Shown piece after piece: positions 7,395-62,776 of a stretch of 64,000 nucleotides of DNA. Position 1 is the first letter of the stretch. Every line of letters starts with the position of its first letter. The notes beneath the pieces are model-generated. The model did not search any database, was not told where the DNA came from, and was given only the letters and a program-made list of their open reading frames with translations. Made by a program: the position numbers and the translations under genes. Location: the IMG/VR virus record IMGVR_UViG_3300009158_000031, positions 190,394 through 254,393 of that record, one strand, 5' to 3'.

Positions 7395-7685
7395 ATGAAA
7401 AACTTTCGAATCGTTATTAAATGTCAAGGTGGTTTCTTAACTATCATCGATAAAAAAACTGAATCCGTAATGGATATTATGAAATCTTTCGTAACACCAA
7501 AAACTATTCTAACAATCGAACAAAAATCCGAAGCATCTGATAATTACTTTACGGTATTCGCAACTAAAGGTTCTAAAGTACATATCGCTTCAAAAGAAAT
7601 TTACGATTCAAACTATATTCAATCATATTGGCCAACAACCGATATGAACAGAATTGGTAAACCAGTAACCGAATGGAGAAACTAA
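7395..7685 (+). CDS. hypothetical early protein
   Basis: ORF directly after promoter repeat. Confidence 0.65.
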   Translation: MKNFRIVIKCQGGFLTIIDKKTESVMDIMKSFVTPKTILTIEQKSEASDNYFTVFATKGSKVHIASKEIYDSNYIQSYWPTTDMNRIGKPVTEWRN

Positions 7686-8132: not shown

Positions 8133-9140
8133 ATGGAAAGAAAATTAGCAAGCATTCAAGTCATTCGAGACATTCGTCCTATTGAAGGAGCAGATGCAAT
8201 CGAATTAGCAATCATTAATGATTGGCAAGTAGTAGTCGCAAAAAGCGTAGGTCATCAAGTTGGCGATCATGTTGTTTATTGTGAAATTGATTCATTCTTA
8301 CCTATAAGAGAAGAATTCGAATTCTTGCGAAAAAGTTCTTATAGGAAGATGGATGATCTAGAAGGATTTCGTCTTAGGACTATAAAACTTCGAGGACAAA
8401 TATCACAAGGACTTATCGTACCAATAAGTATATTTGGTGATTTTGGATGGACCGCATATGAAGGTCTTGATGTTACCGAAAGATTAGGAATTATAAAATA
8501 CGAACCACCTATCCCTGCAGAATTAGCCGGTAAAGTAAAAGGAAACTTTCCTTCATTTATACCAAAGACTGACGAAGAAAGAATTCAAAATCTAACTGAC
8601 AAATATGAGACTTGGAAAACTCAACCATTTTATGTTACTGAAAAATTAGATGGATCATCCGCAACCTACTACTTCCGCAATGGAGAATTTGGAGTGTGTT
8701 CTAGAAATCTAGATCTTGAAGAAACTGAAGGTAATACCTTTTGGAAGATTGCTCGAGAATTAAAGATAGAAGAATGGTTAGGAACACAATCAATTAATTA
8801 TGCCATTCAAGGTGAGTTAATTGGTGAAGGTATTCAAGGAAATCCTTATAAGATCAAAGGACAAACGGTTCGCTTCTTTAACGCATTCAATATAGACAAA
8901 TATGAATACTTAAGTTTAGAAGAATTCGAATCCCTAATCACTTCAATGAAGTTAAAAACCGTTCCAATTATCGATCGTGCATTTACTTTACCTAATACAA
9001 TCGAAGAACTTCTTAATTATGCCGATAAGAAAAGTGAATTGAATAATCAATTTGATCGTGAAGGTGTCGTTATTCGTAGTATCGATCGAAAAATCAGTTT
9101 CAAAGTAATCAGTAACAAATTTCTACTAAACGAAAAATAA
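8133..9140 (+). CDS. RNA ligase, DRB0094/Rnl5 family
   Basis: RKLASI N-terminus, KTDEERIQN, TEKLDGSS, GELIGEGIQGN, EGVV, FKVIS. Confidence 0.9.
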   Translation: MERKLASIQVIRDIRPIEGADAIELAIINDWQVVVAKSVGHQVGDHVVYCEIDSFLPIREEFEFLRKSSYRKMDDLEGFRLRTIKLRGQISQGLIVPISIFGDFGWTAYEGLDVTERLGIIKYEPPIPAELAGKVKGNFPSFIPKTDEERIQNLTDKYETWKTQPFYVTEKLDGSSATYYFRNGEFGVCSRNLDLEETEGNTFWKIARELKIEEWLGTQSINYAIQGELIGEGIQGNPYKIKGQTVRFFNAFNIDKYEYLSLEEFESLITSMKLKTVPIIDRAFTLPNTIEELLNYADKKSELNNQFDREGVVIRSIDRKISFKVISNKFLLNEK

Positions 9141-12580: not shown

Positions 12581-12832
12581 ATGATAAAGCCTAATCTAAA
12601 TTTTTACAACGAATATTATGCATTAATAGATGTTAAAGATCGTGAGAAACTTATATCATTAACAAATAAAATGTCGGAATCAAAACCGGGTTTGCTACAA
12701 GAATCTAAATTTGAGCTAAAGGATAGATTGAATGGCGATATAGAAGTTTGGATATCTAATACAGCAGCATTTGATTATGCAACAAAGAGAATAATTTTCA
12801 ACTTCATTAATGCTCTTAACAAGTTTTATTAA
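12581..12832 (+). CDS. hypothetical protein
   Basis: Operon ORF. Confidence 0.55.
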   Translation: MIKPNLNFYNEYYALIDVKDREKLISLTNKMSESKPGLLQESKFELKDRLNGDIEVWISNTAAFDYATKRIIFNFINALNKFY

Positions 12833-12860
12833 TGATAATATCAAATCAGAAAAAGAAAAT

Positions 12861-13838
12861 ATGCAAAACAAACCAATTAAAATAATCGATGATGTTGAAG
12901 GACAGATTAGATTTATAGTAGAAAATCCAGTAGATAAAACCTATACCATGTACGCTAGAGACGTAGCTACTGGTTTATTAAGAGGAAAAACCAAAATCGA
13001 TTGTAGAATAAAATCACCTGAAGGACATTGGGTATGGTGGAATCCGCATCCTGGAACAGGACAAAGTAAAAGAAAAAACCTAGGTGACATTATTGTAGAA
13101 ATCAAAGATGGTGATAAAATGATTCAAACCGAATATCTTTATCGTCATGGACCAGGAAAAAAATTAATCGTAAAAGACCGAGAGGTTAGATATCCCGGAA
13201 ACCTTACTGACATATATCCTACGGTTTGGGAAATATTCATGGTAGATGATTATTACTCTGAATTTTTAAACATTGACAAAGGTGGAATTGTTGTTGATAT
13301 TGGATTTAATTACGGAATCTTCTCGCTATACGCAATAGACAATTTTGATCCCAAGAAAATATATGCGGTTGAACCAATGCCTTCTTGTGTAAAGATTGGA
13401 AAAAGAATTATGAACGAACAATCTGTTTTAGTTGATATTACCGAAGCCGCAATAACGCTTGAAAATGGTACGGTTTTCATGGACAATTATGAAAATCAAA
13501 CTAATTGTGCAACGGTAGTAGGTTCTAATATACGAACTGCAAAATTCTTAGAATCCGGACAAATACCAGTAAAAGGAATAAACATCAACGATTATCTAGC
13601 AACGATATCCGAAGATGAAATTGAATTAATGAAGATTGATTGTGAAGGTGGTGAAGAATTCATATTTGATACTATCTCACGCCAAAACCTAAGACGAGTA
13701 AAGAATTACATTATCGAATATCATAGTGAAGATATTTCCCAAAAGATTATTAATGTACTTAATTCGGTAGGATATTCAGTTTATCAAAGACCTTCTTGGA
13801 ATAATCATATAGGTACAATTGAAGCATATAAATTATAA
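12861..13838 (+). CDS. FkbM-family SAM methyltransferase with N-terminal extension
   Basis: VDIGFNYGIFS, AVEP, MKIDCEGGE, IEYH; start moved to MQNK. Confidence 0.85.
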   Translation: MQNKPIKIIDDVEGQIRFIVENPVDKTYTMYARDVATGLLRGKTKIDCRIKSPEGHWVWWNPHPGTGQSKRKNLGDIIVEIKDGDKMIQTEYLYRHGPGKKLIVKDREVRYPGNLTDIYPTVWEIFMVDDYYSEFLNIDKGGIVVDIGFNYGIFSLYAIDNFDPKKIYAVEPMPSCVKIGKRIMNEQSVLVDITEAAITLENGTVFMDNYENQTNCATVVGSNIRTAKFLESGQIPVKGININDYLATISEDEIELMKIDCEGGEEFIFDTISRQNLRRVKNYIIEYHSEDISQKIINVLNSVGYSVYQRPSWNNHIGTIEAYKL

Positions 13839-13850
13839 TAACATGAAAAC

Positions 13851-14108
13851 ATGAAAACCCAACTACCTAAAATTGAACTTCTTAATTTTGAAGGACCGGT
13901 ATTACAAGCCGTAAAACATAAAAACCTATACATCATTGTAGATGAATGGAAAGAAATTATTTCGGTTCTTCTAGAAGAAGAATTTCTTGAATTTTTCGAT
14001 GGCGCATTTTCCGTAATAGATTCTGATGGAAGAAATTGGAATATGAGCGAACATCATCGAGATGCCAAACAAACAGCAGAAAAAATACATAAATTTGTAA
14101 ACTTATAA
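13851..14108 (+). CDS. hypothetical protein
   Basis: Operon ORF. Confidence 0.6.
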   Translation: MKTQLPKIELLNFEGPVLQAVKHKNLYIIVDEWKEIISVLLEEEFLEFFDGAFSVIDSDGRNWNMSEHHRDAKQTAEKIHKFVNL

Positions 14109-14109
14109 T

Positions 14110-14319
14110 ATGCAAGACTTAATAGAATCTTTTGAATCGGTTAAGTATCGAATCAAAGCCGAAGGTATGGATTATTGCTTTAAGCATTACTCTAACTTCG
14201 AAGAAATTGAAGATAAAGAATTTCATAAACTAAGAAAGGCTTATATAAAAGCATCAGAGAACATTGAAGAGTATGTGAATTGTAAAATACAAGAACTCCA
14301 AAACGAAGATGGCGAATAA
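14110..14319 (+). CDS. hypothetical protein
   Basis: Operon ORF. Confidence 0.6.
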   Translation: MQDLIESFESVKYRIKAEGMDYCFKHYSNFEEIEDKEFHKLRKAYIKASENIEEYVNCKIQELQNEDGE

Positions 14320-15484
14320 CTCAATAATCAATTGGGAATTATATCAAAAGACTCTAAAACCTTCACATATACATATTGCAGAATTAGATTTTAAAATGAA
14401 AAACAAATTAGATATACAATATCAAGAACTTTTACAAACCATATTAGAACACGGGATTGATAAAGCAGATCGAACCGGAACAGGAACTCGTTCAATATTC
14501 GGTTATACTATTCGTCACAACATGTCAGATGGATTCCCTCTTCTCACAACCAAAAAGATGGCATGGAAATCTATCGTTACCGAGTTATTATGGTTCTTAA
14601 AAGGTGATACTAATATCAAGTACTTAGTTGATAATGATTGTCATATTTGGGATGGTGATGCTTATAAGAATTATGACAAACTTTGTATTGACACAAAGTG
14701 GATGGAACCGGTTAAAAAGGAACTAAATGGCGAAGTTTATGATATGGGAAGAAAATACGATCAAGAAGGGTTCATCAATCGTATCAAAACAGATGATGAA
14801 TTTGCTAAACAATGGGGAGATCTAGGTCCAATCTATGGTAAACAATGGAGAAATTGGGTTAGAAAAACTACACGAGACGAAAAGATTGTTGAACCTGGAG
14901 TATATGAAACGAGTATAGATCAAATCACAAACCTAATCAATGACATTAAAACAAATCCTGATTCACGAAGATTAATGGTCACTGCATGGAATCCTGCCGA
15001 ATTAGATCAAATGGTTCTTCCACCTTGTCATTATGGGTTTCAAATGTATACAAGAGAATTAGATCAAACGGAAAGAGTTATTCTAATGGATAAAAAATTA
15101 GGCGTTACGGAAAACCTTCCTGCATATTATACCGAAGATGAAATGATAAAACATAACATCCCAAAACGAGCAATCTCTCTTATGTGGAATCAACGAAGTG
15201 TAGATACCCTTTTAGGTTTACCATTCAATATTGCAAGTTATGGTTTACTATTAATGATGATTGCCGATGAAGTTAATATGGTTCCTGATCAGCTAATAGG
15301 TAATCTTGGAGATACTCACATATACAACAATCACGTCGATCAAGTAAAAGAACAAATCACTAGAACTCCATTTGAACTACCAACCGTTCATGTTAGAGAT
15401 GGTATTTTTTGTAGTTCTCATAATGATGTTATACTTCAAAATTACAATTCACATCCGGCAATCAAAGCACCTTTAAGTAATTAA
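14309..15484 (+). CDS. thyA: thymidylate synthase (with insertions)
   Basis: DRTGTGT, FPLLTTKK, ELLWF, LPPCH, QRSVD, PFNIASY, GDTHIY; start could be 14396. Confidence 0.95.
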   Translation: MANNSIINWELYQKTLKPSHIHIAELDFKMKNKLDIQYQELLQTILEHGIDKADRTGTGTRSIFGYTIRHNMSDGFPLLTTKKMAWKSIVTELLWFLKGDTNIKYLVDNDCHIWDGDAYKNYDKLCIDTKWMEPVKKELNGEVYDMGRKYDQEGFINRIKTDDEFAKQWGDLGPIYGKQWRNWVRKTTRDEKIVEPGVYETSIDQITNLINDIKTNPDSRRLMVTAWNPAELDQMVLPPCHYGFQMYTRELDQTERVILMDKKLGVTENLPAYYTEDEMIKHNIPKRAISLMWNQRSVDTLLGLPFNIASYGLLLMMIADEVNMVPDQLIGNLGDTHIYNNHVDQVKEQITRTPFELPTVHVRDGIFCSSHNDVILQNYNSHPAIKAPLSN

Positions 15485-21963: not shown

Positions 21964-22197
21964 ATGCAATATTATATAGGCATATTACCAGAAGATCGAG
22001 GTCGACTTAGATCCACGATAGAGTTTTTAAATGACAATCCCAATTGGCGATGGCAGGTTAAAGTCTTATCAGAATTTGACGATCCTGATGGATATTATAC
22101 ATTCCAAATGGAAGGGAATGAGGAGACTTATCGACACTTTCTTCGACTCTCTACTAACGAAGGATTTGTCAAATCTCTTAATCATTATGAAGAGTAG
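21964..22197 (+). CDS. hypothetical protein
   Basis: Operon ORF. Confidence 0.55.
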   Translation: MQYYIGILPEDRGRLRSTIEFLNDNPNWRWQVKVLSEFDDPDGYYTFQMEGNEETYRHFLRLSTNEGFVKSLNHYEE

Positions 22198-22444
22198 TTG
22201 GTTCGTTTATATAGTTCGTTGCTCTGATGGAACTCTGTATACCGGAATCACCGTTGACCTTCAAAAACGAGTGGCCTCTCACAACTCCAAGAAAGGAGCT
22301 AAATATACTGCGACTCGAACTCCTGTCGAGTTAGTTTGGTCTCAACCTTCAGAAACGAGATCCACTGCCGCGAAAGAAGAGTGGAGAATAAAACAGCTTT
22401 CCCGTACAGAAAAACTCGCCTTAATAGATAATCTTATATTATAA
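22187..22444 (+). CDS. GIY-YIG nuclease (UPF0213/YhbQ-like)
   Basis: WFVYIVRCSDGTLYTGIT..R...HN..GAKYT; start moved to MKSSW. Confidence 0.9.
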   Translation: MKSSWFVYIVRCSDGTLYTGITVDLQKRVASHNSKKGAKYTATRTPVELVWSQPSETRSTAAKEEWRIKQLSRTEKLALIDNLIL

Positions 22445-22569
22445 TAATCTAGTACAGATCACTCCCTTGCAAGTAGAGTAAATAAAAAGTTTGCTCACTC
22501 TAAACACACTCTTCTAATATAATCTACTACATCTTATATAGGATAAACCGCTTTATATAGAAGGTAATA

Positions 22570-22900
22570 CGCTATATAAGGTAATAATCTATATAGATAA
22601 CTCTCCTCCTCGTCTGACTAGTCGTGGTGTTGTGAGCGGAGAAATCCGGTAAGCCACGGAGGAAGCCGGTATTTGCAGATCCGCTTATAGTGACACCTTT
22701 TGTTTTCCGCATTCTCACAAAGATTTGCCGCATATACCAACGAGCCGTTAAGTACCGAGGAATCCATAATCGTAATGGCTCTCAATCACCCAGGGCTCGT
22801 TGCTAACTCCCATCACCAAAGCTACTCCGTCCACAACCCGCCTACCCTTATATAGTGATAATTGGATCCGGTGGTAATTCCGCCTTACCTTATATAAGGA
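22570..22900 (+). ncRNA. GC-rich structured non-coding element of unknown class
   Basis: Several stems read by eye, including CAACGAGCC/GGCTCGTTG; no long ORF. Confidence 0.45.
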
Positions 22901-22925
22901 ATATTGAATCCAGTAGCGATTAAGA

Positions 22926-22987
22926 TGTTAATAACTTTCTCACAAAACATTTTTTTATTACAACCTTTTTTATTATATTTGTATATA
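22926..22987 (+). promoter_or_regulatory. promoter repeat copy 4
   Basis: TGTTAATAACTTT...TATTATATTTG. Confidence 0.8.
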
Positions 22988-23007
22988 CATAATAACTAAT
23001 ACACTAT

Positions 23008-24473: not shown

Positions 24474-25562
24474 ATGACAATATCTCAAAAGCAATTTAGT
24501 GACTTCCGAGAAGACGCACTAAAAAATCAACCACTCCGCAAGGAAATCGCACTAGCCGATATTCGTTTCGTCACTATGGATGCAATCGAATATGCCGGTT
24601 TAAACTTTGGACTTGCTCGTCCTGCACTTAAAGATCTAATGCGTATATTAGGTGTAAACATGAATATCGAATCTCGCTTATCTGAATCTATCGGTGAGGA
24701 TGGTGCGAGGAACTTCCTTAATGGTCTAAGATCTGCACTATCTAAATCAGCCGGATCTATTATCTTATCGGTTACACCAGATCGCATCATTCAACGTATC
24801 ACTAAAGGTGGAAAAGAAACTTCACTCTTTACTGCACCTACCTACTTCAATACAGTAGATCGCTTTATGAATACCAACTCCGGTATGGAAATAAAGGATA
24901 TGCACTTCAATCGCGAAACAGGTGGAATATCGCTCTCTGCGGCTTCACCCAAATCAGAATTTAACGTGGGTAACTTTAACGATGAGGTTTTCCATGGAGG
25001 ATTAAATCTCTCTATCACTGCCGATGGAATTAAAGCCGCTCCTTATCTACACCGTCTAGTGTGTACGAACGGAATGGTAACACGTTCTTTCGAGGAATCC
25101 TTTAATCTTAATCGCAACACCACTGAAAGTTGGACTTCCTTCTGGCAGAATCTAGAAAGAATCGAACACTCTGGATTTCAACCCATCGCCTTTACCAACA
25201 AGGTACTCGCTGCGAAAAACACTACTGCTTCTTTCGCTGAGATGGAAAGATCAATGAACCTCATCCTAGGTAATTCAAAATGTGATCTAGACAATCTACC
25301 CCAATTCATCAATTACCGTCCGACCTTCAATCGTCTACACTCTACAGGAATCGATACCCTGAAGTTAACACCAGGACAGAAACGCAATCTACGTACTGGC
25401 TTAACCATGTGGGATTGCATTAATGGAGTTACCGATTTTGCCTCACACAATTATGGTTTTGAAAAAACAGCTAACTGTGATCGCCACTTACAGTTACAAG
25501 CTGGTGATATCCTCACTAAGGACTTCGACACACAAAACCTAATCCTGAATCAACCTTACTAA
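24474..25562 (+). CDS. DUF932-like phage/plasmid protein
   Basis: LHRLVCTNGM; TMWDCINGVTDFASH. Confidence 0.7.
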   Translation: MTISQKQFSDFREDALKNQPLRKEIALADIRFVTMDAIEYAGLNFGLARPALKDLMRILGVNMNIESRLSESIGEDGARNFLNGLRSALSKSAGSIILSVTPDRIIQRITKGGKETSLFTAPTYFNTVDRFMNTNSGMEIKDMHFNRETGGISLSAASPKSEFNVGNFNDEVFHGGLNLSITADGIKAAPYLHRLVCTNGMVTRSFEESFNLNRNTTESWTSFWQNLERIEHSGFQPIAFTNKVLAAKNTTASFAEMERSMNLILGNSKCDLDNLPQFINYRPTFNRLHSTGIDTLKLTPGQKRNLRTGLTMWDCINGVTDFASHNYGFEKTANCDRHLQLQAGDILTKDFDTQNLILNQPY

Positions 25563-25612
25563 GAGTAAGGAACTGCGAGTGGAGAAAACCACTCTAATTT
25601 GATAATACCACT

Positions 25613-25639
25613 AAGGCTGCTCACTAGAGTGGCCTTTTT
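25613..25639 (+). terminator. intrinsic terminator
   Basis: AAGGCTGCTC-ACTA-GAGTGGCCTT then TTT. Confidence 0.75.
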
Positions 25640-25682
25640 GTGGTTTACACAGCGAGACTGCCCTATTACTCACCTTTACCAC

Positions 25683-26030
25683 CTAGAAGAGACTAGATAC
25701 CTTCTAGTCTCACCTAATAAGGGCCTGTACAGATCTAGACCAGCAAAACAACATCCTACTAGATCTAGATCTTAACAAGAAGAGCCTAGATAGACTAGAT
25801 GAGTACTAGCAGTGTACTAGTAGGATCTATTAAGGCTAGAAGCAGACTAGAAGAGCTCAATATATCCACATATAGGACAGAAGAGTGCTATAAAGACTCA
25901 TATATACTCATTATATCACCGATAGATCATCTAGAAGCCGCTGAGGTGAGCTATAGGGACTAGAAAGTCAAAAAAAGGTCACAAAAAGCCAAAAAGGATC
26001 ACTTTTAGCCAAAAAGGATCAAAAAGGCCA
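25683..26030. repeat. helically phased CTAG array and phased A-tract repeats
   Basis: 14 CTAG within 25683-25963; AGCCAAAAAGGATCA at 25987 and 26007. Confidence 0.8.
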
Positions 26031-26583
26031 CATGTGCTCCTCGTAATCCATGTCTTGTCCGCGTTAACGTCCCGTGGAAGTCCAGTCCTGGCTAGGGCCC
26101 ATGAAATTCCGGACATTTTTGACCCTCGAAACTTTGGGCCGGAAATAAGGCGACGCACATCCCACTCTATACGGAAAGCCCTTTCTGGTAACGCGAGTAA
26201 GAGAAGCCCAAAGGCCTTTTTAAAAAAATTTTCCAGACTATATAGGATCTCTCGAAACTCATTGACTAATATATAGAGTAGCCGGTGAGTCTTTTTAAAC
26301 CTTTCTGACTCTTTGTTTTGCTCGAAGGAGAAGGTACTGACAGAGTGAAGACGGCTACTTTGTTTACAGTAATCTGTTAATAGTAAACTCTTACCCGACG
26401 CAAACGACGAGGGGCCATCCAGACTTCTCTGATGGTTTATTTCGCATCCCTCTTTTATACTCTCGGTATAAATTCGAGACCTCGATTGAACTGCCGATAC
26501 CGCGACTCGCATCTGATAACCACGATAAATAAACCATATACTCGATCTTACCGGCGAATCGTGTAAGTCATATAAAAACTAAT

Positions 26584-26910
26584 ATGGAAATGAAAACTGT
26601 AATGTACTGTTCAACTATTGAAGATGCACGAGAGTGTATTGAAGATGATACGACGATATTTCCGCTTCTCGAAAGAGCTCTGATTACCATGTGGAAGACA
26701 ACCTCTCACTCTGAGGAAGTTCTAGAAATCCGTTGTATGGATGTAGGTGCTTCTATGTGGGTAACTCTCCGTCGAAGTGAGTGTGATGAAGTATGGGAGA
26801 AGATCATCACTTGGAGAAGTGGAAGAGAAGAGTGGGAAGAACTGACGGTACTTAAAGATATTCGAGATGAGTGGTTCAACTCTAAGAAGGTTGTGGAGCC
26901 AGTCCATTGA
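26584..26910 (+). CDS. hypothetical protein
   Basis: ORF after CATATAA motif; weak UVR-like end. Confidence 0.6.
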   Translation: MEMKTVMYCSTIEDARECIEDDTTIFPLLERALITMWKTTSHSEEVLEIRCMDVGASMWVTLRRSECDEVWEKIITWRSGREEWEELTVLKDIRDEWFNSKKVVEPVH

Positions 26911-27395: not shown

Positions 27396-28016
27396 ATGAA
27401 AAACATTCAAACATACGAAAGCTTCTTAAATGAACTTCGACATTCAAAAGAGTTTTTAATAGACCTATTTTCTAAAATGGATATTTTAGATAATGATGTA
27501 TACAAAAACATTTTAATCCATTACATTGAACAACCACAAAATTTAGAAAAACAAGAGTTCATTGATTTAGTTTCATGGTTGATCCAGAATAAAAACAAGT
27601 ACAGTGAAGTACTAAAGCCTAAAAATGGATATGCATACAGAGGAACTTCAATAACTCCTGATATGTTTCATAAATTAAAAAATGGATTATCAAAAAAAGA
27701 AGGTGGTATAAGCATATTTAACTTTCCTTATACCAGCGAATCAGAAGCACAAAGTTGGACATATGATTATAAAGTAGCAATGAGGTTTGCGGATAAAGGT
27801 CTTTTAAATAACCCTAGATTAGAAAAAGGAGCTAGACCAGCTATTTTAAGAGCTAAGATAGATGATACATTTGTAGGTAATCCTAAGTTGACTGGTCCCA
27901 TAGCTGACCGATTAAGTCTGAAGTCCGAAAAGGAAATATTTCATTTAGGGAATTCTATAAAAGATGCTGAATGGATGATATTCTCAGCCGATATAGAATT
28001 AGGAAAATTTAATTAG
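27396..28016 (+). CDS. ADP-ribosyltransferase-fold protein with capsid-targeting-like N-terminus
   Basis: MKNIQTYESFLNE; YRG, QSWT...A..FA, EKE (R-S-E triad). Confidence 0.6.
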   Translation: MKNIQTYESFLNELRHSKEFLIDLFSKMDILDNDVYKNILIHYIEQPQNLEKQEFIDLVSWLIQNKNKYSEVLKPKNGYAYRGTSITPDMFHKLKNGLSKKEGGISIFNFPYTSESEAQSWTYDYKVAMRFADKGLLNNPRLEKGARPAILRAKIDDTFVGNPKLTGPIADRLSLKSEKEIFHLGNSIKDAEWMIFSADIELGKFN

Positions 28017-28026
28017 TATAAAGACT

Positions 28027-28425
28027 ATGAAATCAATATCGACATATGATGAATTCTTAAATGAGTCTATTCGTGCAGAAGAGGCTTATCGAGATACAGG
28101 AGCTATTCAAACCGTCATTGATGGAAAGAGAGATATGGGATTCATTACCATCAAATCATCGGTTGATGTGAGCGAAAAAGAATTCTGGACATTGGTGAAG
28201 ATACACGATCTGAGTACCATTCACCTATCTGGAAATGAATATGATGCCTATATCTATTATCATAAAGGAGCCGAGCGAGGTGCCAGAGAGCTAGCGAAGA
28301 TTGCTAACAAATACGGTGGATATCTATCACATGAAGCGACTGAACGAGAATCTCGTCGAATAGGCGAACTTCTAGGTTACGATCGACGAGACATAGATGA
28401 TTATATAAAGAAAAACTACAAATAA
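28027..28425 (+). CDS. hypothetical protein with capsid-targeting-like N-terminus
   Basis: MKSISTYDEFLNE; IGELLGY. Confidence 0.65.
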   Translation: MKSISTYDEFLNESIRAEEAYRDTGAIQTVIDGKRDMGFITIKSSVDVSEKEFWTLVKIHDLSTIHLSGNEYDAYIYYHKGAERGARELAKIANKYGGYLSHEATERESRRIGELLGYDRRDIDDYIKKNYK

Positions 28426-28582: not shown

Positions 28583-29287
28583 ATGAGAAAGATAGCCTTA
28601 TATGAGCAATGGATAAATGAAATTGGTGATTCATCAGCCAAGCCATTCAAATGGAGTAGTCCTGTTATCGCTGTTAATATGAAGAGATGGATAGATGATT
28701 GTATCGAAGGAGCTGCAGACAAGAAGATGAGTGGAACTCAAGAAGATATTTACTATAAAACTAAAACATTTAGATATGAATTCCGATCGGATGTGACTAA
28801 TACAAATTATCATGTACACATCGGTGGATTTGTTGGTAGAAATATCTGGATTGCCTTTCAAGGAGAAAAACCTAAAGATTGGGTTGGATATCATATAATT
28901 GCCGGATTAGGATTTGGTGTTGAAGGAGATTTCGATAAAACTACTAATCTTAATGAACAATTCCGAGTAATGGCAACCGTTACCGAATGTGCCATTGATT
29001 TTCTACAACGATTCTTGGATGATGGACGAATCAAGATTGATAAATTTCACATGAAACCTAAGGCCGATCACGAAGAACAAAAAGGAATAGATTCTCGTCG
29101 AGCTAAACTATATGCCCCTTATATTAAAGCCGCATTCCGCAAACTCAAAACGAAGAAGGATTATTACATAGATCAAGAGGCAGATGGATTCGTTCTTCAT
29201 TTCGGAAAGGTCATAATGAACTCTCCTTATTCCACTTCAGTATTAGCATCAACCTTTGAAAATGAAGAATCCAATGAAATCAATTAA
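28583..29287 (+). CDS. hypothetical protein with capsid-targeting-like N-terminus
   Basis: MRKIALYEQWINE; RRAKLY. Confidence 0.65.
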   Translation: MRKIALYEQWINEIGDSSAKPFKWSSPVIAVNMKRWIDDCIEGAADKKMSGTQEDIYYKTKTFRYEFRSDVTNTNYHVHIGGFVGRNIWIAFQGEKPKDWVGYHIIAGLGFGVEGDFDKTTNLNEQFRVMATVTECAIDFLQRFLDDGRIKIDKFHMKPKADHEEQKGIDSRRAKLYAPYIKAAFRKLKTKKDYYIDQEADGFVLHFGKVIMNSPYSTSVLASTFENEESNEIN

Positions 29288-30344
29288 GCTATATGAAGCC
29301 TTCTTAACAGAAGGAGGCTGGGCAACAACCAAAACACAAGGAACCGTTCTGACTCCAGCTGTTATCGCTGAGGTTGTGAAGGTTATGGATCTGATCAATA
29401 CGGGATTCAATGGACATTTGAGAGAGCTTGAACTTCCCACTCTAGATATTCTAAAACCTATTGGCAGTGGAACTTGGTGGAGTGAAGATGTGACCGAACA
29501 ACCAGACAAAACTTATGGAGATGTCGATTACATGGTTGCCTATCCCACTTTGAAGCTCACTGCTGGTCGTGATAGAGAAGATGAGATTGCTACGGTGAAG
29601 CTATACAATACCGAGCTGCTCATGTGGTTAGAGGAAGAAGGTATCACCGATGTAGATATTGATGAGACGAAGAAAATATCTTCGGATGTTTCTCTTAAGT
29701 TAATTGCGATCGTTCCCTTTAATGGAACTGATGCATATGTTCAGGTTGATATGGTTGTTACTCACAAAGAGTATAGTGATTGGGCAGTATTCCGTATGAC
29801 TCCTATTCGTAACGTTAAAGGTTTTGTGCTAGGAAATCTCTACTCTTCATTTGGTGAAGTTCTAGATTTGTCTATTCAGGCAAGAGGAGTAAGAGCTAAA
29901 TTTGAAGGTCAGGTTATGAAGCCTTATTCTAAACGAGCTAATGTTGAGGATCGCATCATCTCACAAAATGCTGAATCATTCATGACCGATATCGCTCGTT
30001 TCTTTTGGGAACAGAGCGGAACAGATATTCCATTCACCGCTACTCCTATCGAATCTTGGAAGGGAATGGATCGCAACTCTCCTCGATTCGAAGATCTAGC
30101 CGAAGGAATTCGTCTGGTTGCCGAGACACTAGGTCAGCTAGACGAATTTGGAACTACTATTAAATACAAATCAGCTGCTGATCTACTAAATGCAGTGATT
30201 GCTCAATATACGAAGAAGATGATGGAAGCTTATAATTCTGCTAAATTTGATAAGGCAGAAACTCCAGCAGCAAAAGCCATTATCACTAAAGTTAGAGCAA
30301 CCATTGACGAATATATCAGTCTGGCTAAATCACTACTTACATAA
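29274..30344 (+). CDS. nucleotidyltransferase-like protein with capsid-targeting-like N-terminus
   Basis: MKSIKLYEAFLTEGG; IGS...GDVD...VQVD Pol-beta-type motifs. Confidence 0.6.
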   Translation: MKSIKLYEAFLTEGGWATTKTQGTVLTPAVIAEVVKVMDLINTGFNGHLRELELPTLDILKPIGSGTWWSEDVTEQPDKTYGDVDYMVAYPTLKLTAGRDREDEIATVKLYNTELLMWLEEEGITDVDIDETKKISSDVSLKLIAIVPFNGTDAYVQVDMVVTHKEYSDWAVFRMTPIRNVKGFVLGNLYSSFGEVLDLSIQARGVRAKFEGQVMKPYSKRANVEDRIISQNAESFMTDIARFFWEQSGTDIPFTATPIESWKGMDRNSPRFEDLAEGIRLVAETLGQLDEFGTTIKYKSAADLLNAVIAQYTKKMMEAYNSAKFDKAETPAAKAIITKVRATIDEYISLAKSLLT

Positions 30345-30351
30345 AAGTAAT

Positions 30352-30726
30352 ATGTTATACTATTCACCAAAAATTGCAGTCGGAGAATCGACTGTAGCAG
30401 GCAGAGGTGTATTTGCCATAGCCGATATAGAGGCTGGAGAGGTACTTGAAGAGTGCCACTTCTTTTTACTAACTAATGGTAATCATTCAGCTATGGATGA
30501 TACTTTAAAAGAGATGGTATTCGCATGGCCGGCATATAATGATGTTCATCAATTTGCTGTTGTACTAGGCAGTGGAACTGTTTATAATCATTCATATGAA
30601 AACAATGCAACCTGGGATACTGATGAAGCTAAATGCTGTTTCAGATTTTCTTCTACTCGAGACATAAAGGCCGGTGAAGAGATATTCACAAATTATAACC
30701 GAAGCGGAGGAAATCACTTTGATTGA
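30352..30726 (+). CDS. SET-domain methyltransferase
   Basis: GRGVFA..DI.AGE, YNHS, RDIKAGEEIFTNY. Confidence 0.9.
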   Translation: MLYYSPKIAVGESTVAGRGVFAIADIEAGEVLEECHFFLLTNGNHSAMDDTLKEMVFAWPAYNDVHQFAVVLGSGTVYNHSYENNATWDTDEAKCCFRFSSTRDIKAGEEIFTNYNRSGGNHFD

Positions 30727-43110: not shown

Positions 43111-44205
43111 ATGGAAGCAATCCAATTAACAAATGCTCAAATCCTCAAAGCTGAAAAACGTCATGAACGTTCGAGATTTGCAGATAAGTATCAGCTAAAA
43201 AACCCATACAATGGAACTGAATATTTGTTCCGTGGAATATGGCGTTCAAATCGAGAATTTATTATTTCTCGAGGAACAGAAACTTATTTGGTACCATTTG
43301 ATAATGTGAATCCAAATCCAACAAACGCAAAAATCGAATCTGCTGAGAATCGCAAAATCGAATTGGTACTTATTGATGATCTACATTATGATGATCGTAT
43401 CTTTCAACCAATGCGAACCGGAACCCCAATCGATTACATGTTTTCAAACGATGGTGGAATTTATCCGGCTACAAATTACATGGTTATCGGTGATCCTGGC
43501 ATTGGGAAATCTACACAAACACTTGATCTCCTTGCAAAAATCAAAAAGAACGAACCTCATCGAAAAATACTTTTCATCTCTGGCGAAATGAATCAAATCG
43601 ATATGTATGGTTATGTTAAACGTTATCCATCATTCGGTAAAATACCTACTCTCTTCCTTTGTGATTATCTAGACGAGGATCCTAAAGAAATCATCGAACA
43701 AACATTTAATCAAGGTTGGGATATCATCCTTATCGATTCATTTATCGAAGTTCAAGAATCCGTTCAAGCTTCTTCAAATATGACAAGAACTGCAGCAGAA
43801 AAATGGTTAATCGATATGATGGTCACTCAAAATAAAGGAAACAATGAAGCAAATCTATTTACATCCGTACTTGCAATTCAACAAGTAACTAAGGGTGGTA
43901 ATTTCGTTGGTTCCAATAAATTAAAACATAATACAACCGGTATGATCGAATTAAGATACTCATCCGAATTTACCGGTGATCGTTATGCTAAGGTAACTAA
44001 AAATCGTCGAGGTTTCAAATACGAAAAAATATACTTCTCTCTTGATAATCCACTCGAAGTAGAATACGATCAAAAACGACTTGAACGAGATGAAGAAATT
44101 CGTAAACGTTTACAACGTGAAAAAGAAACTCTTCTTTCCGAGGAAGAGAAATTCAATAAGATTTTCGGTATCATACAACCGGAATTAACCGAAACAGAAA
44201 ATTAA
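43111..44205 (+). CDS. RadA/Sms-like RecA-fold ATPase (no Zn finger or Lon-like domain)
   Basis: GDPGIGKST, ISGE, ILIDS, VTKGG, KNRRG. Confidence 0.8.
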   Translation: MEAIQLTNAQILKAEKRHERSRFADKYQLKNPYNGTEYLFRGIWRSNREFIISRGTETYLVPFDNVNPNPTNAKIESAENRKIELVLIDDLHYDDRIFQPMRTGTPIDYMFSNDGGIYPATNYMVIGDPGIGKSTQTLDLLAKIKKNEPHRKILFISGEMNQIDMYGYVKRYPSFGKIPTLFLCDYLDEDPKEIIEQTFNQGWDIILIDSFIEVQESVQASSNMTRTAAEKWLIDMMVTQNKGNNEANLFTSVLAIQQVTKGGNFVGSNKLKHNTTGMIELRYSSEFTGDRYAKVTKNRRGFKYEKIYFSLDNPLEVEYDQKRLERDEEIRKRLQREKETLLSEEEKFNKIFGIIQPELTETEN

Positions 44206-48638: not shown

Positions 48639-48725
48639 ATGAAAAAGTTAAAACAAAACTGGCCAATAGTAGCTATACTAATTTGGTTTACTTTAATTGG
48701 CATAATTGCAGTTAAATTAGGATAA
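48639..48725 (+). CDS. 28-aa single-TM peptide (missing from ORF track)
   Basis: MKKLKQNWPIVAILIWFTLIGIIAVKLG; TAATG-coupled to the RNA ligase. Confidence 0.55.
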   Translation: MKKLKQNWPIVAILIWFTLIGIIAVKLG

Positions 48726-49828
48726 TGGAATTAACAAAAGAAATACTAATCCAATACGAAGAAGAAGGATGGATTCGTTCACAATCGCATCCTACTCTCC
48801 CATTGAGAATTCTTAACTATACTCAGAAAACTCAGTATGAATCTCATTGGGATGAAGTAACTCTCAGTTGTCGAGGACTTATCATCGATTCAGAATATAA
48901 GGTAATCGTTCAGCCATTCGGTAAATTCTTCAATTATGAAGAGGTCGAAAACAAAGGAGAAATTCCTTTGTCTGGTGATTATGTCTATGTCCAAGATAAA
49001 ATGGATGGTTCTCTTGGTATTTTATTTTGGTATGAATCCGAATGGATAATGGCTACTCGAGGATCTTTCACTTCAGATCAAGCAATCCGAGGATTAGAAA
49101 TTGCAAATCGTCTATTTAATTTAGAGGCTTGGGAAAAATCCATTGCTTATGCATGTGAAATCATTTATCCGGAAAATCGAATTGTAGTTGATTATGGAAT
49201 TGATGAGAAACTCATTTTTCTTAGTGCCTTTTATAACCGTGCATTTTATAATAACAATACAAAAGATTCAGAATTACATTGGACTACTGCAAAAGCATTC
49301 TTCAATGTAAATGGAATTCCTTACAAGTACATCGTTCACACCGAACAGCATTTCGTATTTGGAACTTCTCTTTATAAAGCACTAAAGGAAATGAATCAAC
49401 GAAATTCTGAAGGTTTCATTCTTCGATTCCATCCTTCTAATTATCGAATGAAAATCAAATTTGAAGATTATGTTAGACTTCATCGAATAATCACCAGCAT
49501 CTCATCATATGACGTTTGGGAAAACCTAATGAATACTGGTGAAATGTCTGAAAAGGTTTTAGTCGAAGTTCCTGATGAATTTTATTCATGGGTTCGTAAA
49601 ACAGAAGAGGATATTCGTTTAGCATATTCCAAATTAGAAACCGAGTATCTAGATCATTTTGATTCCATCAAACGTTTAGGAACTCGAAAGCTATTTGCTC
49701 AATCCGCCAGAAACTTTAGTTATCCTGGAATTTTGTTCAATATGCTAGATGGTCAAGATTATTCAAAAGGAATTTGGTTAATAATCAAACCTAAATATGA
49801 GAAGCCTTTTAGTAATAATGAATCTTGA
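48725..49828 (+). CDS. T4 Rnl1-type RNA ligase
   Basis: CRGLI, KFFN, KMDGSLG, ATRGSF, EII, EGFI, KIK. Confidence 0.9.
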   Translation: MELTKEILIQYEEEGWIRSQSHPTLPLRILNYTQKTQYESHWDEVTLSCRGLIIDSEYKVIVQPFGKFFNYEEVENKGEIPLSGDYVYVQDKMDGSLGILFWYESEWIMATRGSFTSDQAIRGLEIANRLFNLEAWEKSIAYACEIIYPENRIVVDYGIDEKLIFLSAFYNRAFYNNNTKDSELHWTTAKAFFNVNGIPYKYIVHTEQHFVFGTSLYKALKEMNQRNSEGFILRFHPSNYRMKIKFEDYVRLHRIITSISSYDVWENLMNTGEMSEKVLVEVPDEFYSWVRKTEEDIRLAYSKLETEYLDHFDSIKRLGTRKLFAQSARNFSYPGILFNMLDGQDYSKGIWLIIKPKYEKPFSNNES

Positions 49829-50620: not shown

Positions 50621-50622
50621 CT

Positions 50623-50697
50623 AAAGATGTAGCTCAGTGACATTAATGAGAGCAATCCGTGAGGACGTGACGGTAGGTTGGATTCCTCCCATCTTTT
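50623..50697 (+). ncRNA. tRNA-like RNA lacking an anticodon loop
   Basis: AAAGATG/CATCTTT acceptor, GCTC/GAGC D-stem, TCC-GTGA-GGA in place of anticodon arm, T-like loop TTGGATT. Confidence 0.65.
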
Positions 50698-50800
50698 ATT
50701 TTGGCTACCTTAATATGTCCCTGGCCAGGAATCGTAAACCCGAGATGCCTATCGCCCGAAGCACACTAGCTCGTTTGGATCGTAAGCCAACAAAGTTTTT

Positions 50801-52301: not shown

Positions 52302-52317
52302 TTTAATAAACCTCAAT

Positions 52318-53895: not shown

Positions 53896-53897
53896 CA

Positions 53898-55374: not shown

Positions 55375-55407
55375 TATGTCATTCATATAATTACTAAATC
55401 GTAATTA

Positions 55408-62742: not shown

Positions 62743-62776
62743 GTTATAATGTTTTGTTTGTTTTTATATTTATTCG

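What the first reader, a model, noticed from the sequence alone, without database searches (positions are those of the whole stretch)
25683..26030. CTAG repeated every ~10.3 bp, then phased A-tracts: DNA built to wrap or bend
Seen: CTAG at 25683, 25693, 25704, 25735, 25765, 25786, 25795, 25806, 25817, 25836 and 25847 fits a ~10.3-bp register within about 2 bp. Near-matches (CTAA 25714, CTAT 25827) fill empty slots; 25759 is off-phase. A/T-tracts then recur about every 10 bp from 25970 to 26025, with a 15-bp direct repeat. Established: phased TA steps favour wrapping and phased A-tracts bend DNA. Inference: a wrapping site for small terminase (pac), an origin protein or gyrase.
Basis: partly seen in the sequence, partly recalled or inferred. 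Interest (0 to 1): 0.8.

Follow-up and report, generated by a model that had tools for sequence, protein, structure and literature searches.

The report
Phased CTAG-box array with DNA bend
A 1-kb gene-free gap in an uncultivated jumbo phage carries CTAG boxes one DNA turn apart, then the most strongly bent DNA of the window and a conserved core; relatives share this layout, so it looks like a docking site for a DNA-wrapping protein, most likely a replication origin, though its role is unproven.

Summary
There are 12 CTAG in 170 bp (25683-25850), against at most 4 anywhere else in the window and at most 5 in shuffles. They sit on a 10.25-bp register (R=0.81). With CTAA, CTAC and CTAT, 14 of 17 helical slots are filled.

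The A-tracts at 25970-26025 share that register. They are the best-phased A/T-tract cluster and the highest predicted curvature in the 64 kb.

The element lies in a 1-kb gap (25563-26583) between a DUF932 gene with its terminator and the promoter of the next gene. Lake metatranscriptomes cover both genes but not the gap.

Relatives keep the layout although the sequence no longer aligns: boxes, TATA-rich repeats, a bend 44-75 nt before a conserved core (26055-26140), and significant 10.2-10.4-bp TA and A-tract periodicity. Lineages with only 27-29% DUF932 identity also carry CTAG arrays there.

It is therefore a selected cis-acting DNA scaffold for a cooperative, wrapping protein. Which process it serves is unresolved. 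An origin of replication is my best guess (about 0.35). A transcription-control region, a packaging site and a centromere remain open. No binding protein was identified. I rate it a new variant of a known kind.

The parts
24474..25562 (+). DUF932-family gene (362 aa). It is the constant upstream neighbour of the element in every lineage examined.
   Evidence: 122 homologues were found, one of which carries PF06067. The protein atlas scores 0.97-0.98 to DUF932 clusters. The gene is transcribed in lake metatranscriptomes.
25595..25646 (+). Conserved TAATTTGAT string followed by an intrinsic terminator. The hairpin is at 25613-25636 with a T-rich tail.
   Evidence: The terminator scan finds it. 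An RNA contig from run X8 ends at 25644. TAATTTGAT followed by a hairpin is present in L005, L006, L007, L008, L011, L027 and L028.
25629..25675 (.). Left arm of a long-range inverted repeat. It consists of GTGGCCTTTTTGTG and CCCTATTACTCACCT.
   Evidence: Inverted-repeat pairs I3, I4 and I5. The I3 stem appears in the centroid single-stranded DNA fold, z=-2.9.
25683..25850 (.). Core CTAG-box array. It holds 12 CTAG and 3 CTAN on a 10.25-bp register. The consensus box is about GACTAGA(A/T)G. It includes the palindrome at 25684-25716.
   Evidence: Searches give the counts, phasing and enrichment. The palindrome is inverted repeat I6. The array is predicted to be straight.
25849..25965 (.). TATA-rich repeat segment. 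Two roughly 26-nt units lie at 25849-25874 and 25879-25904. There are TATAGG boxes, an 8-of-9 DnaA-box-like ATATCCACA at 25862, and two further in-frame CTAG at 25931 and 25960. The right arm of the inverted repeat, AGGTGAGCTATAGGG, is at 25944-25958.
   Evidence: Direct repeat D4 and inverted repeat I3. Equivalent roughly 40-nt TATA/TATAGG units occur in L004 and L005. DnaA boxes are not enriched.
25967..26031 (.). Phased A-tract module forming a static bend. It is three copies of the 20-bp unit AAAAAGGATCACAAAAAGCC, with iterons of the form A5-GG-N-CAC. One inverted copy lies in the terminator at 25629-25640.
   Evidence: An equivalent bend lies 44-75 nt upstream of the core in L028, L005 and L013, where it is the locus-wide curvature maximum. 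Its orientation is flipped in L013, which has T-tracts.
26055..26140 (.). Conserved GC-rich core: GCGTTAACGTCCCG, then about 23 nt, then CCCATGAAATTCCGGACA, then GACCCTCGAAAC. It is the best-conserved non-coding block of the gap.
   Evidence: Alignments A1-A3. It is unique in the window. It is among the 1-3% most stable duplex segments of the window. It does not fold better than shuffles as RNA on either strand. Conservation is not in a codon pattern.
26222..26238 (+). Conserved A-run/T-run-CCAGA string (AAAAAAATTTTCCAGA).
   Evidence: It is present in L007 (twice), L008, L011 and L028, and in variant form in L013, L050, L058 and L067. Its function is unknown.
26279..26357 (+). CyVA-1-like RNA motif. 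The match is below the family threshold.
   Evidence: Rfam RF02965 scores 37.3 bits against a gathering score of 41.4, E about 1e-6. It was not found in the other relatives.
26513..26542 (+). Promoter-like site for the downstream gene (CTGATA, 18 nt, TATACT). It corresponds to the CGATACATATAATA string conserved in relatives.
   Evidence: The promoter scan finds it. RNA contigs resume at 26552 (X21), 26615 (X9) and 26652 (X8). The string is conserved in alignment A2.
26584..26910 (+). First gene after the gap: an acidic 108-aa protein of unknown function.
   Evidence: Homologues occupy the same position in L007, L008, L011, L013 and L050. No family hit was found.

Best explanation
The stretch is a cis-acting DNA scaffold, not a gene.

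Proposed mechanism:
- About 15 CTAG(A) boxes sit one helical turn apart on one face of the duplex over about 280 bp. They load a cooperative, oligomerising DNA-binding protein whose identity is unknown.
- The adjoining TATA-rich repeats and a phased A-tract block, the static bend, continue the same rotational frame. They steer the DNA around that protein.
- This places the nucleoprotein complex 40-75 bp from a strongly conserved GC-rich core.
- I take the core to be the working site and the array plus bend to be its loading platform.
- The most likely job is initiation of phage DNA replication, that is, an iteron-type origin.

What is shown: the boxes, the phasing, the bend, the absence of laid RNA contigs, and the conservation of the architecture.
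What is inferred: protein wrapping, and above all the origin function.

My confidence is about 0.75 that this is a selected protein-binding or wrapping DNA element, and about 0.35 that it is an origin.
For: 1. The box cluster and its 10.25-bp register are far beyond chance, and 14 of 17 slots are filled.
2. The A-tract centres share the frame. The block is the best-phased A/T-tract cluster and the top curvature peak of the 64 kb.
3. The 416-bp spacer ranks first in the window for TA, CTA|TAG and AAA|TTT periodicity at 10.0-10.6 bp.
4. Relatives show selection on architecture rather than on sequence:
   - The spacer is unalignable even where DUF932 is 90-94% identical.
   - CTAG phasing nevertheless persists in L028 (R=0.74 at 10.2 bp) and L005 (R=0.93 at 10.1 bp).
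   - TA periodicity is significant (p<=0.003) in the window, L028, L005, L007 and L011, and marginal in L013 (p=0.06). AAA/TTT periodicity is significant in all six (p<=0.023).
   - The length from the DUF932 stop codon to the core stays at 440-564 nt.
   - The bend 44-75 nt before the core is the locus-wide curvature maximum in four genomes, and is strand-flipped in one of them.
5. Lineages with 27-29% DUF932 identity also have 0.9-1.1-kb gaps holding 7-23 CTAG, with 21 and 23 in L067 and L058 and 7 in L061. In L058 and L067 the boxes are locally 11-12 bp apart. L058 and L067 also have a core-like string.
6. The element lies between a working terminator and a promoter. No RNA contig was laid on 25645-26550 in three lake metatranscriptomes that cover both flanking genes.
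7. The core does not fold better than shuffles as RNA.
8. GC skew changes from negative to positive across the gap, with all genes on one strand, in the window, L007, L011 and L013.
9. In L058 the module lies next to a DnaB/RecA-like ATPase and an HTH protein.
Against: - No initiator or other binding protein was identified. DUF932 has no fold relative in the PDB. The only nearby ribbon-helix-helix-like ORF (27396-28016) has homologues in unrelated contexts that lack CTAG clusters.
- There is no unusually unstable, unwinding-prone segment in the gap.
- DnaA boxes are not enriched.
- The window contains other GC-skew switches, at about 20, 36 and 46 kb, and the flanking genes are homologous among relatives, so the skew evidence is weak.
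- The L008/L027-type relatives keep the core but lack the boxes and the bend.
- Strict phase coherence is seen only in the window sub-lineage; L007, L013, L058 and L067 are not coherent over the whole gap.
- The RNA evidence comes from assembled contigs at low depth, so a gap in them proves little. Two sediment metatranscriptomes hold 5-7% of the gap's sampled words.
- No replication data exist.
Confidence: 0.35

Rival explanations
1. Transcription-control region. The phased boxes would be operator or enhancer sites, and the A-tract bend an UP-like upstream curve, for a promoter at or near the conserved core. That promoter would drive a small RNA (the CyVA-1-like motif at 26279-26357) or the downstream genes. 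Alternatively the complex insulates two transcription units.
For: - A curved segment 44-75 nt upstream of a conserved sequence is typical promoter geometry.
- A CyVA-1-like motif lies downstream. CyVA-1 was originally found in intergenic regions of at least 600 bp (PMC5737381).
- TATAGG/TATATAG boxes recur in a second long gap (22445-23007) that is also followed by GC-rich sequence.
- The neighbourhood is rich in RNA genes in relatives: L008 carries tRNAs there.
- Sediment metatranscriptomes hold a short part of the gap.
- In L058 and L067 the gene after the gap is an HTH protein.
Against: - No RNA contig lies on 25645-26550 in three metatranscriptomes that cover the flanking genes.
- The downstream gene has its own proximal promoter, and RNA starts at about 26552.
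- The core region shows no RNA folding signal on either strand.
- No sigma-70-like or Bacteroidota-type promoter is evident at the core (and reading the sequence).
- CyVA-1 is below threshold and absent from the other relatives.
Confidence: 0.2
2. Packaging initiation site (pac or cos). Small terminase would bind the phased boxes, the static bend would play the part of an IHF-type bend, and the conserved core would be the cut site.
For: - The architecture resembles known packaging sites, from established knowledge. Lambda cosB has R sites plus a bend next to cosN. SPP1 pacL and pacR have phased boxes and intrinsic curvature flanking pacC.
- The core is unique in the window.
- Several short contigs of relatives end inside the gap.
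Against: - No terminase, portal or other packaging gene was found among the proteins of the 64 kb that were scanned.
- Four long contigs (122-266 kb) run through the site.
- Three contigs of this phage end 38-40 kb downstream instead.
- Read-start pile-ups could not be examined, because only assembled contigs were available.
Confidence: 0.12
3. Centromere-like segregation or positioning site. It would be bound by a ribbon-helix-helix or ParB-type protein, as in plasmid parC, where iterons one turn apart wrap around ParR.
For: - Box spacing of 10-11 bp over more than 10 repeats, and the 4-bp palindromic box core, fit ribbon-helix-helix dimer arrays (established knowledge for R1 and pSK41 parC).
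- A weakly ribbon-helix-helix-like ORF lies 1.4 kb downstream: PHROG Arc-like E=0.003 and Pfam RH3 E=0.018, over the same residues.
- In L061 a ParB-like domain protein follows the gap.
Against: - No ParM, ParA or TubZ-type motor was recognised nearby.
- The ribbon-helix-helix-like protein's homologues are not linked to CTAG arrays.
- No close relative of the clade was found in bacterial genomes, so no prophage or plasmid form is known.
Confidence: 0.08
4. Topological element. This would be a strong gyrase (or other topoisomerase or nucleoid-protein) site that uses anisotropically flexible, phased DNA.
For: Periodicity of about 10.25 bp in TA steps and A-tracts over about 340 bp is the kind of pattern that favours wrapped DNA. 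Known precedents are the Mu strong gyrase site and pSC101 par (established knowledge).
Against: A conserved, specific box (CTAGA) and its deep conservation point to sequence-specific recognition, not merely to flexibility. No gyrase consensus was tested.
Confidence: 0.05
5. No function of its own: a decayed short tandem repeat in a weakly constrained spacer, with the 10-11-bp period an accident of unit length. A related variant is a protein-sponge RNA carrying repeated CUAG motifs.
For: - The 25785-25857 part reads as degenerate 9-11-bp units.
- The spacer evolves fast.
- L056 has a 13-bp unit.
Against: - The register is kept across non-repetitive interruptions and extends into the A-tracts.
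- Tandem Repeats Finder does not see a tandem array in the CTAG boxes.
- Independent rearranged arrays in L028 and L005 keep a phase of 10.1-10.2 bp.
- Periodicity and spacer length are conserved in six genomes.
- No RNA was laid on it.
Confidence: 0.07

Closest known systems
Iteron-type replication origins (lambda ori with O-protein iterons and sequence-directed bend; T4 oriE iterons; plasmid oriV of R6K, P1 and pSC101)
   Same: - Multiple short binding repeats on one helical face.
- An adjacent intrinsically bent A-tract segment.
- Repeats that evolve fast while the layout is kept.
- A single copy in a non-coding region.
   Different: - No initiator gene was recognised next to it.
- No DnaA boxes and no outstanding AT-rich unwinding element were found.
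- The boxes are very short (a 4-6-bp core) and far more numerous (about 15) than typical iterons.
- A GC-rich conserved core replaces the usual AT-rich region.
Plasmid type II centromeres (R1 parC and pSK41 parC bound by ribbon-helix-helix ParR)
   Same: - Ten or more repeats spaced 10-11 bp apart.
- Cooperative one-face binding that wraps DNA into a ring or superhelix.
- A palindromic 4-bp box core that suits a ribbon-helix-helix beta-ribbon.
   Different: - No ParM or ParR operon adjoins it.
- It lies in an apparently lytic jumbo phage.
- The array is not split around a promoter.
- An extra static bend and a conserved core are attached.
Phage packaging sites (lambda cosB-cosN; SPP1 pacL-pacC-pacR)
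   Same: - An array of recognition boxes.
- A bend.
- A unique conserved site beside them.
   Different: - No terminase gene is nearby.
- Long contigs run through the site.
- No terminus evidence exists.
CTAG- or TAGA-containing operators of TrpR, MetJ and P22 Arc
   Same: CTAG or TAGA(A/G) as the recognised core, with tandem cooperative binding.
   Different: Those operators have 2-5 sites at 8- or 11-bp spacing within promoters. Here there are about 15 sites over 280 bp in a stretch on which no RNA contig was laid.
Nucleosome-positioning sequences (such as Widom 601)
   Same: TA steps and A/T-tracts recur in a common rotational frame at about 10.2 bp.
   Different: - This is a bacterial virus.
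- There is a specific extended box.
- No histone-like partner has been shown.

Membership tests
Intrinsically bent phased A-tract DNA | At least 4 A/T-tracts of at least 4 nt whose centres repeat every 10-11 bp | tested here: met
   Six tracts lie at 25970-26025, with R=0.81 at 10.25 bp. This is the top curvature peak of the window in two wedge models. A gel-mobility anomaly was not testable.
Iteron-type replication origin | Cluster of repeated protein-binding sites | tested here: met
   There are 12-15 CTAG(A) boxes and 5-6 A5-GG-N-CAC iterons.
Iteron-type replication origin | Adjacent easily unwound AT-rich element | tested here: not met
   The least stable 40-mers in the gap reach only the 88th-91st percentile of the window. 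The gap as a whole is more GC-rich than the genome.
Iteron-type replication origin | Cognate initiator gene at or beside the origin | tested here: inconclusive
   DUF932 is always adjacent but has no known function and no PDB fold match. The other neighbours have no family hits.
Iteron-type replication origin | Host DnaA boxes | tested here: not met
   There is one 8-of-9 match in the gap, against 0.375 per kb in the window overall, and at most one in any relative (one in L028, none in the other seven).
Iteron-type replication origin | Replication starts here (marker frequency, 2-D gels); strand-skew switch | tested here: inconclusive
   GC skew goes from negative to positive across the gap in four genomes, but there are other switches in the window. 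Replication start itself is not testable with these tools.
pac/cos packaging site | Lies in or next to the terminase genes | tested here: not met
   No terminase or portal hit was found among about 70 proteins of the window that were scanned.
pac/cos packaging site | Genome termini or read-start pile-up at the site | not testable with these tools
   Only Logan contigs were available, and the single read-laying run showed no joints or ends there in DNA run X3 beyond low-coverage breaks.
Type II/Ib plasmid centromere (parC-like) | Iterons about one helical turn apart | tested here: met
   The commonest spacings are 9-11 bp, on a 10.25-bp register.
Type II/Ib plasmid centromere (parC-like) | Adjacent centromere-binding protein and motor genes (ParR/ParM, ParG/ParF) | tested here: not met
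   No such families occur nearby. The weak ribbon-helix-helix-like ORF 27396-28016 is not syntenic with CTAG arrays elsewhere.
Structured non-coding RNA gene (for the array or the core) | Transcribed, and folds better than chance or shows covariation | tested here: not met
   No RNA contig was laid on it. Folding z-scores are +0.6 and +1.2. RNAalifold finds only 5 pairs with one compensatory change.
Rfam CyVA-1 (for the neighbouring motif at 26279-26357) | Score at or above the family's gathering threshold | tested here: not met
   37.3 bits against a threshold of 41.4.

The most novel reading that the evidence does not exclude
A family-wide cis element of uncultivated freshwater jumbo phages that has not been described before. 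About 400 bp of DNA carries nucleosome-like rotational phasing (TA steps and A-tracts at about 10.25 bp) plus specific CTAG(A) boxes. It would wrap around a still unknown phage or host protein core and be functionally coupled to the enigmatic DUF932 protein. That would be a new type of origin or chromosome organiser, and would give DUF932 its first function.
Probability: 0.15. Interest if true: 0.8.

Novelty: new variant of a known kind. Interest (0 to 1): 0.6.

Why it matters
Replication origins, packaging signals and other cis elements of jumbo phages are almost unmapped, and those of uncultivated phages are entirely so.

This is a sharply defined candidate that can be recognised by computation: boxes, a bend and a core downstream of DUF932. 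It is conserved across phage lineages that share only 27-29% identity in the flanking gene.

It offers a concrete handle for three things:
- Finding the protein that reads CTAG(A) boxes.
- Testing whether DUF932, which is widespread in phages, plasmids and integrative elements and has no known function, acts on DNA.
- Asking how far selection shapes DNA mechanics, namely helical phasing kept while the sequence turns over, in viral genomes.

Tried and rejected
- **Coding potential.** ORFs in the gap, including the 177-aa minus-strand ORF 25979-26512, have no family hits. The gene calls on the gaps of L007, L011 and L013 show no gene there. They are judged spurious.
- **Known RNA families.** The only match is the sub-threshold CyVA-1 hit downstream. 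There is nothing in the second long gap or in the relatives.
- **Core as structured RNA.** There is no folding signal and covariation is weak.
- **T7/SP6-type promoter idea.** AGGTGAGCTATAGGGA at 25944 and an inverted copy at 25675 resemble such promoters, but CTATAGG occurs only three times in the window and is not placed upstream of genes. The idea was dropped.
- **DnaA-dependent origin.** DnaA boxes are not enriched.
- **Unwinding element.** None stands out.
- **Ribbon-helix-helix-like ORF 27396-28016 as the binder.** It has no homologue in the array-bearing loci. Its homologues elsewhere lie in unrelated contexts without CTAG clusters.
- **DUF932 function.** The literature gives nothing. 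A PDB sequence-profile search gives nothing. The AlphaFold model (pLDDT 82.5) has no Foldseek match with E<0.1.
- **The 362-aa gene 29256-30344.** It looks like a Pol-beta-type nucleotidyltransferase, not an initiator.
- **Isolated phages.** There is no DNA match, and only one 23%-identical protein match, in 50,697 phage records.
- **Core pattern scans.** The hits in IMG/VR other than this phage appear to be chance matches. The JGI metagenome scan gave L027, L028 and L029.
- **Bacterial genomes.** Only distant DUF932 relatives were found (24-36% identity over full-length or near-full-length matches), and no prophage form of this clade.
- **Mobile-element reading.** No second copy of the boxes or the core exists in the window.
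- **Hc1-like histone lead in L007.** No counterpart was found at the syntenic place in the window.
Full report
**Context.**
The window is the last 64 kb of a jumbo-phage contig of at least 254-266 kb from lake metagenomes. Identical copies exist in four assemblies.
- GC content is about 33%, and genes lie almost entirely on the + strand.
- The host is probably a member of Bacteroidota. The evidence is a CHU_C type IX secretion domain and distant DUF932 relatives in Bacteroidota and Flavobacteriales genome bins.
- No isolated phage is close.
- The finding lies in a 1,021-bp gene-free gap (25563-26583). Upstream is a DUF932-family gene (24474-25562). Downstream is a 108-aa gene (26584-26910).

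- There are 12 CTAG in 170 bp. The maximum elsewhere in the window is 4, and dinucleotide-type shuffles never exceed 5. Poisson p is about 6e-14.
- The 12 core sites fit a 10.25-bp register with R=0.81. p=0.016 when any period from 5 to 20 bp is allowed, and p=0.0004 for periods of 10-11 bp.
- Eleven sites lie within 1.2 bp of the frame, and 25759 is off-phase.
- CTAA 25714, CTAC 25756 and CTAT 25827 fill empty slots, so 14 of 17 turns carry a CTAN box.
- The box extends to about GACTAGA(A/T)G, mostly in one orientation, with a local palindrome at 25684-25716.
- Tandem Repeats Finder does not call this array a tandem repeat.

**The A-tract block.**
- It is the best-phased A/T-tract cluster of the 64 kb.
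- In two wedge models, with parameters recalled from memory, it is the highest curvature peak of the window, about 37 degrees and z about 5.
- The same models predict that the CTAG array itself is straight.
- The A-tract centres fall in the same rotational frame as the CTAG TA steps, with an offset of 0-1 bp. One frame therefore runs for about 340 bp.
- The 416-bp spacer ranks first among all such segments of the window for TA, CTA|TAG and AAA|TTT periodicity at 10.0-10.6 bp.

**Anatomy of the gap.** In order:
1. A conserved TAATTTGAT string and an intrinsic terminator (25613-25636 plus tail).
2. The box array (25683-25850).
3. TATA-rich repeats with TATAGG boxes and two more in-frame CTAG (25849-25965).
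4. The A-tract bend (25967-26031).
5. A GC-rich core (26055-26140: GCGTTAACGTCCCG, about 23 nt, CCCATGAAATTCCGGACA, and so on).
6. An A-run/T-run-CCAGA string (26222-26238).
7. A sub-threshold CyVA-1-like motif (26279-26357).
8. A promoter-like site (26513-26542).

A collinear inverted repeat (25629-25675 paired with 25944-25982) brackets the array.

**Transcription.**
- Three lake metatranscriptomes cover the DUF932 gene.
- One contig ends at 25644, right after the terminator.
- Coverage resumes at 26552-26652 on the next gene.
- Nothing is laid on 25645-26550.
- No lake RNA run holds the gap. Two sediment RNA runs hold 5-7% of its sampled words.
- These are low-depth contigs, so the silence is suggestive only.
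- The core region folds no better than shuffles on either strand, and its conservation shows no codon pattern.
- I therefore read the core as a DNA-level element.

**Relatives.**
DUF932 homologues are numerous. Their contigs gave 11 further gaps from about 8 distinct phages.

*Within the clade of at least 47% DUF932 identity (L004/L005, L028, L007, L011/L012, L013, L050):*
- The long gap, the terminator, a motif-rich spacer, TATA repeats, phased A/T-tracts, the core and a CATATAAT-type promoter recur.
- The spacer is unalignable even at 90-94% protein identity.
- CTAG phasing nevertheless persists in L028 (R=0.74 at 10.2 bp) and L005 (R=0.93 at 10.1 bp).
- TA periodicity at 10.15-10.3 bp is significant in five genomes and marginal in L013 (10.45 bp, p=0.06). 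A/T-tract periodicity at 10.0-10.4 bp is significant in all six.
- The distance from the DUF932 stop codon to the core stays at 440-564 nt.
- A bend 44-75 nt before the core is the locus-wide curvature maximum in the window, L028, L005 and L013. In L013 it is built of T-tracts, so it works regardless of strand.
- L011 uses GACTGT and CCCACT motifs instead of CTAG.

*Exception:* L008- and L027-type phages keep the core but lack the boxes and the bend. They have tandem repeats of about 45 nt after the core instead.

*Distant lineages:* with only 27-29% DUF932 identity, L056, L058, L061 and L067 also have gaps of 0.9-1.1 kb.
- They hold 7-23 CTAG, with 21 and 23 in L067 and L058 and 7 in L061.
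- In L058 and L067 the local spacings are mostly 11-12 bp, with inverted CTAGA-box palindromes, a core-like CCCATG...TTCCGGACACTTTT string and the same promoter type.
- DUF932 is the only neighbour they share with the window.

**Interpretation.**
Selection here keeps box content, helical phasing, spacer length and a bend next to a conserved core, while the sequence itself turns over. That is the signature of a cis-acting nucleoprotein assembly site: a cooperative protein bound on one DNA face, with DNA steered around it towards the core. I put about 0.75 on this general statement.

Its biological role is not settled.

*Origin of replication (about 0.35)* fits best. In its favour:
- Iteron-like arrays, a bend and a unique core.
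- No RNA contig laid on the stretch.
- Fast-evolving repeats.
- A negative-to-positive GC-skew change across the gap in four genomes, with genes all on one strand.
- In L058, neighbours that include a DnaB/RecA-like ATPase and an HTH protein.

Against it:
- No initiator was recognised.
- DnaA boxes are not enriched.
- No outstanding unwinding element was found.
- There are other skew switches in the window.
- The L008-type lacks the array.

*Rivals:*
- A transcription-control region for a core-proximal promoter or small RNA (0.2).
- A pac or cos site (0.12). This is weakened by the absence of terminase genes among the scanned proteins of the 64 kb and by long contigs running through the site.
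- A parC-like centromere (0.08).
- A gyrase or topology site (0.05).
- A functionless decayed repeat or sponge RNA (0.07).

**The binder remains unknown.**
- DUF932 modelled well (pLDDT 82.5) but has no fold relative in the PDB and no literature on its function.
- A weakly ribbon-helix-helix-like ORF (27396-28016) is attractive because Arc-type proteins read TAGA boxes. However, its homologues sit in unrelated contexts without CTAG clusters, and it is absent from the array-bearing relatives.

**Novelty.**
Arrays of one-turn-spaced boxes with an adjoining A-tract bend are a known design, seen in lambda ori, parC and pac/cos sites. This instance differs in four ways:
- It has a very short CTAG core repeated about 15 times.
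- A single rotational frame is shared by the boxes and the A-tracts over about 340 bp.
- It has a GC-rich conserved core.
- It has a conserved partnership with DUF932 in uncultivated jumbo phages.

I rate it a new variant of a known kind, with interest about 0.6.

**Limits.**
- Only the one read-laying run returned contigs, not reads.
- The curvature parameters came from memory.
- The relatives' GC-skew values are not independent of one another.

Noticed in passing
window 26279-26357 (+): Sub-threshold match to the Rfam CyVA-1 small-RNA motif (37.3 bits against 41.4; E about 1e-6). Its loop carries a GAAGGAGAA string. The sequence is nearly identical in L028 but was not detected in the other relatives.
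   Followed up: partly
window 25304-25644: In metatranscriptome run X8, one 371-nt contig joins 25644 (the terminator 3' end) back to 25304, giving a 341-nt circle-like unitig. It may be a ligated or circularised 3' fragment of the DUF932 mRNA, or an assembly artefact. The phage encodes two RNA ligases (8133-9140 and 48725-49828).
   Followed up: no
window 22445-23007: A second long non-coding gap. It has four TATATAG(G/A) boxes about 19 nt apart (22533-22600), a GC-rich stretch (22600-22850) and two more such boxes. There is no Rfam match. In L008 the equivalent upstream gaps hold tRNA genes.
   Followed up: partly
window 4618, 18404, 24416, 46659, 49840, 51566 (+); also L007, L008, L011, L013, L050, L058, L067 just before the first gene after the gap: CATATAATA / ACATATAAT(A/T) recurs on the coding strand shortly upstream of the genes at 4644, 18416, 24474 and 46671, and a variant lies before the gene that follows the gap in relatives. 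It is probably a phage promoter motif.
   Followed up: partly
L008 7132-7710 (also L009, L010): A GIY-YIG homing-endonuclease-like ORF is inserted between the DUF932 gene and its terminator in the lineage that lacks the CTAG array. The window has its own GIY-YIG ORF at 22031-22444.
   Followed up: no
window 25944-25959 (+) and 25675-25661 (-): Two inverted copies of a string resembling SP6/T7-class promoters (AGGTGAG-CTATAGGGA) flank the box array. CTATAGG is otherwise nearly absent from the window, so it is not a general promoter.
   Followed up: partly
window 12810-15484 and 51621-56388: A gene set that suggests modified DNA bases or sugars: an enlarged thymidylate-synthase-like protein (391 aa), FkbM-type methyltransferases, a Nol-like carbamoyltransferase, glycosyltransferases and a nucleotide-sugar epimerase.
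   Followed up: no
window 30247-30726; L007 13000-13086: A SET-domain (lysine methyltransferase-like) protein in the window. In relative L007, a gene with a precomputed Hc1 (chlamydial histone H1-like) domain hit lies a few genes downstream of the gap. No Hc1-like gene was seen at the syntenic place in the window.
   Followed up: partly
window 28027-28425: A 132-aa ORF with a weak, below-cut-off Pfam match to the NleE cysteine methyltransferase effector family (22.9 bits against 27).
   Followed up: no
window 50622-50700: A tRNA-like sequence directly after tRNA-Met that ARAGORN and Rfam did not call. The surrounding segment is second in the window for CTA|TAG periodicity.
   Followed up: no
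window end (about 64000); IMG/VR contigs of 122, 207 and 254 kb: Three independent contigs of this phage all end 38-40 kb downstream of the gap, near the point where gene orientation flips to the minus strand (61609-63993). This could be an assembly-breaking repeat, a variable region or a genome end.
   Followed up: no
L058 845-1720 and 4555-4791; L061 3299-3703: In distant DUF932 lineages the CTAG-rich gap is flanked by a DnaB/RecA-like ATPase upstream (the same PHROG families as window 43111-44205). It is followed by a 78-aa HTH protein in L058 and L067, or by a ParB-like domain protein in L061.
   Followed up: partly
window 25661-25675 / 25944-25958; L007 7235-7247 / 7516-7528: Long-range inverted repeats bracket the motif array with exactly 268 nt between the arms, both in the window and in the 53%-identity relative L007. 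This may be coincidence or a looping geometry.
   Followed up: no
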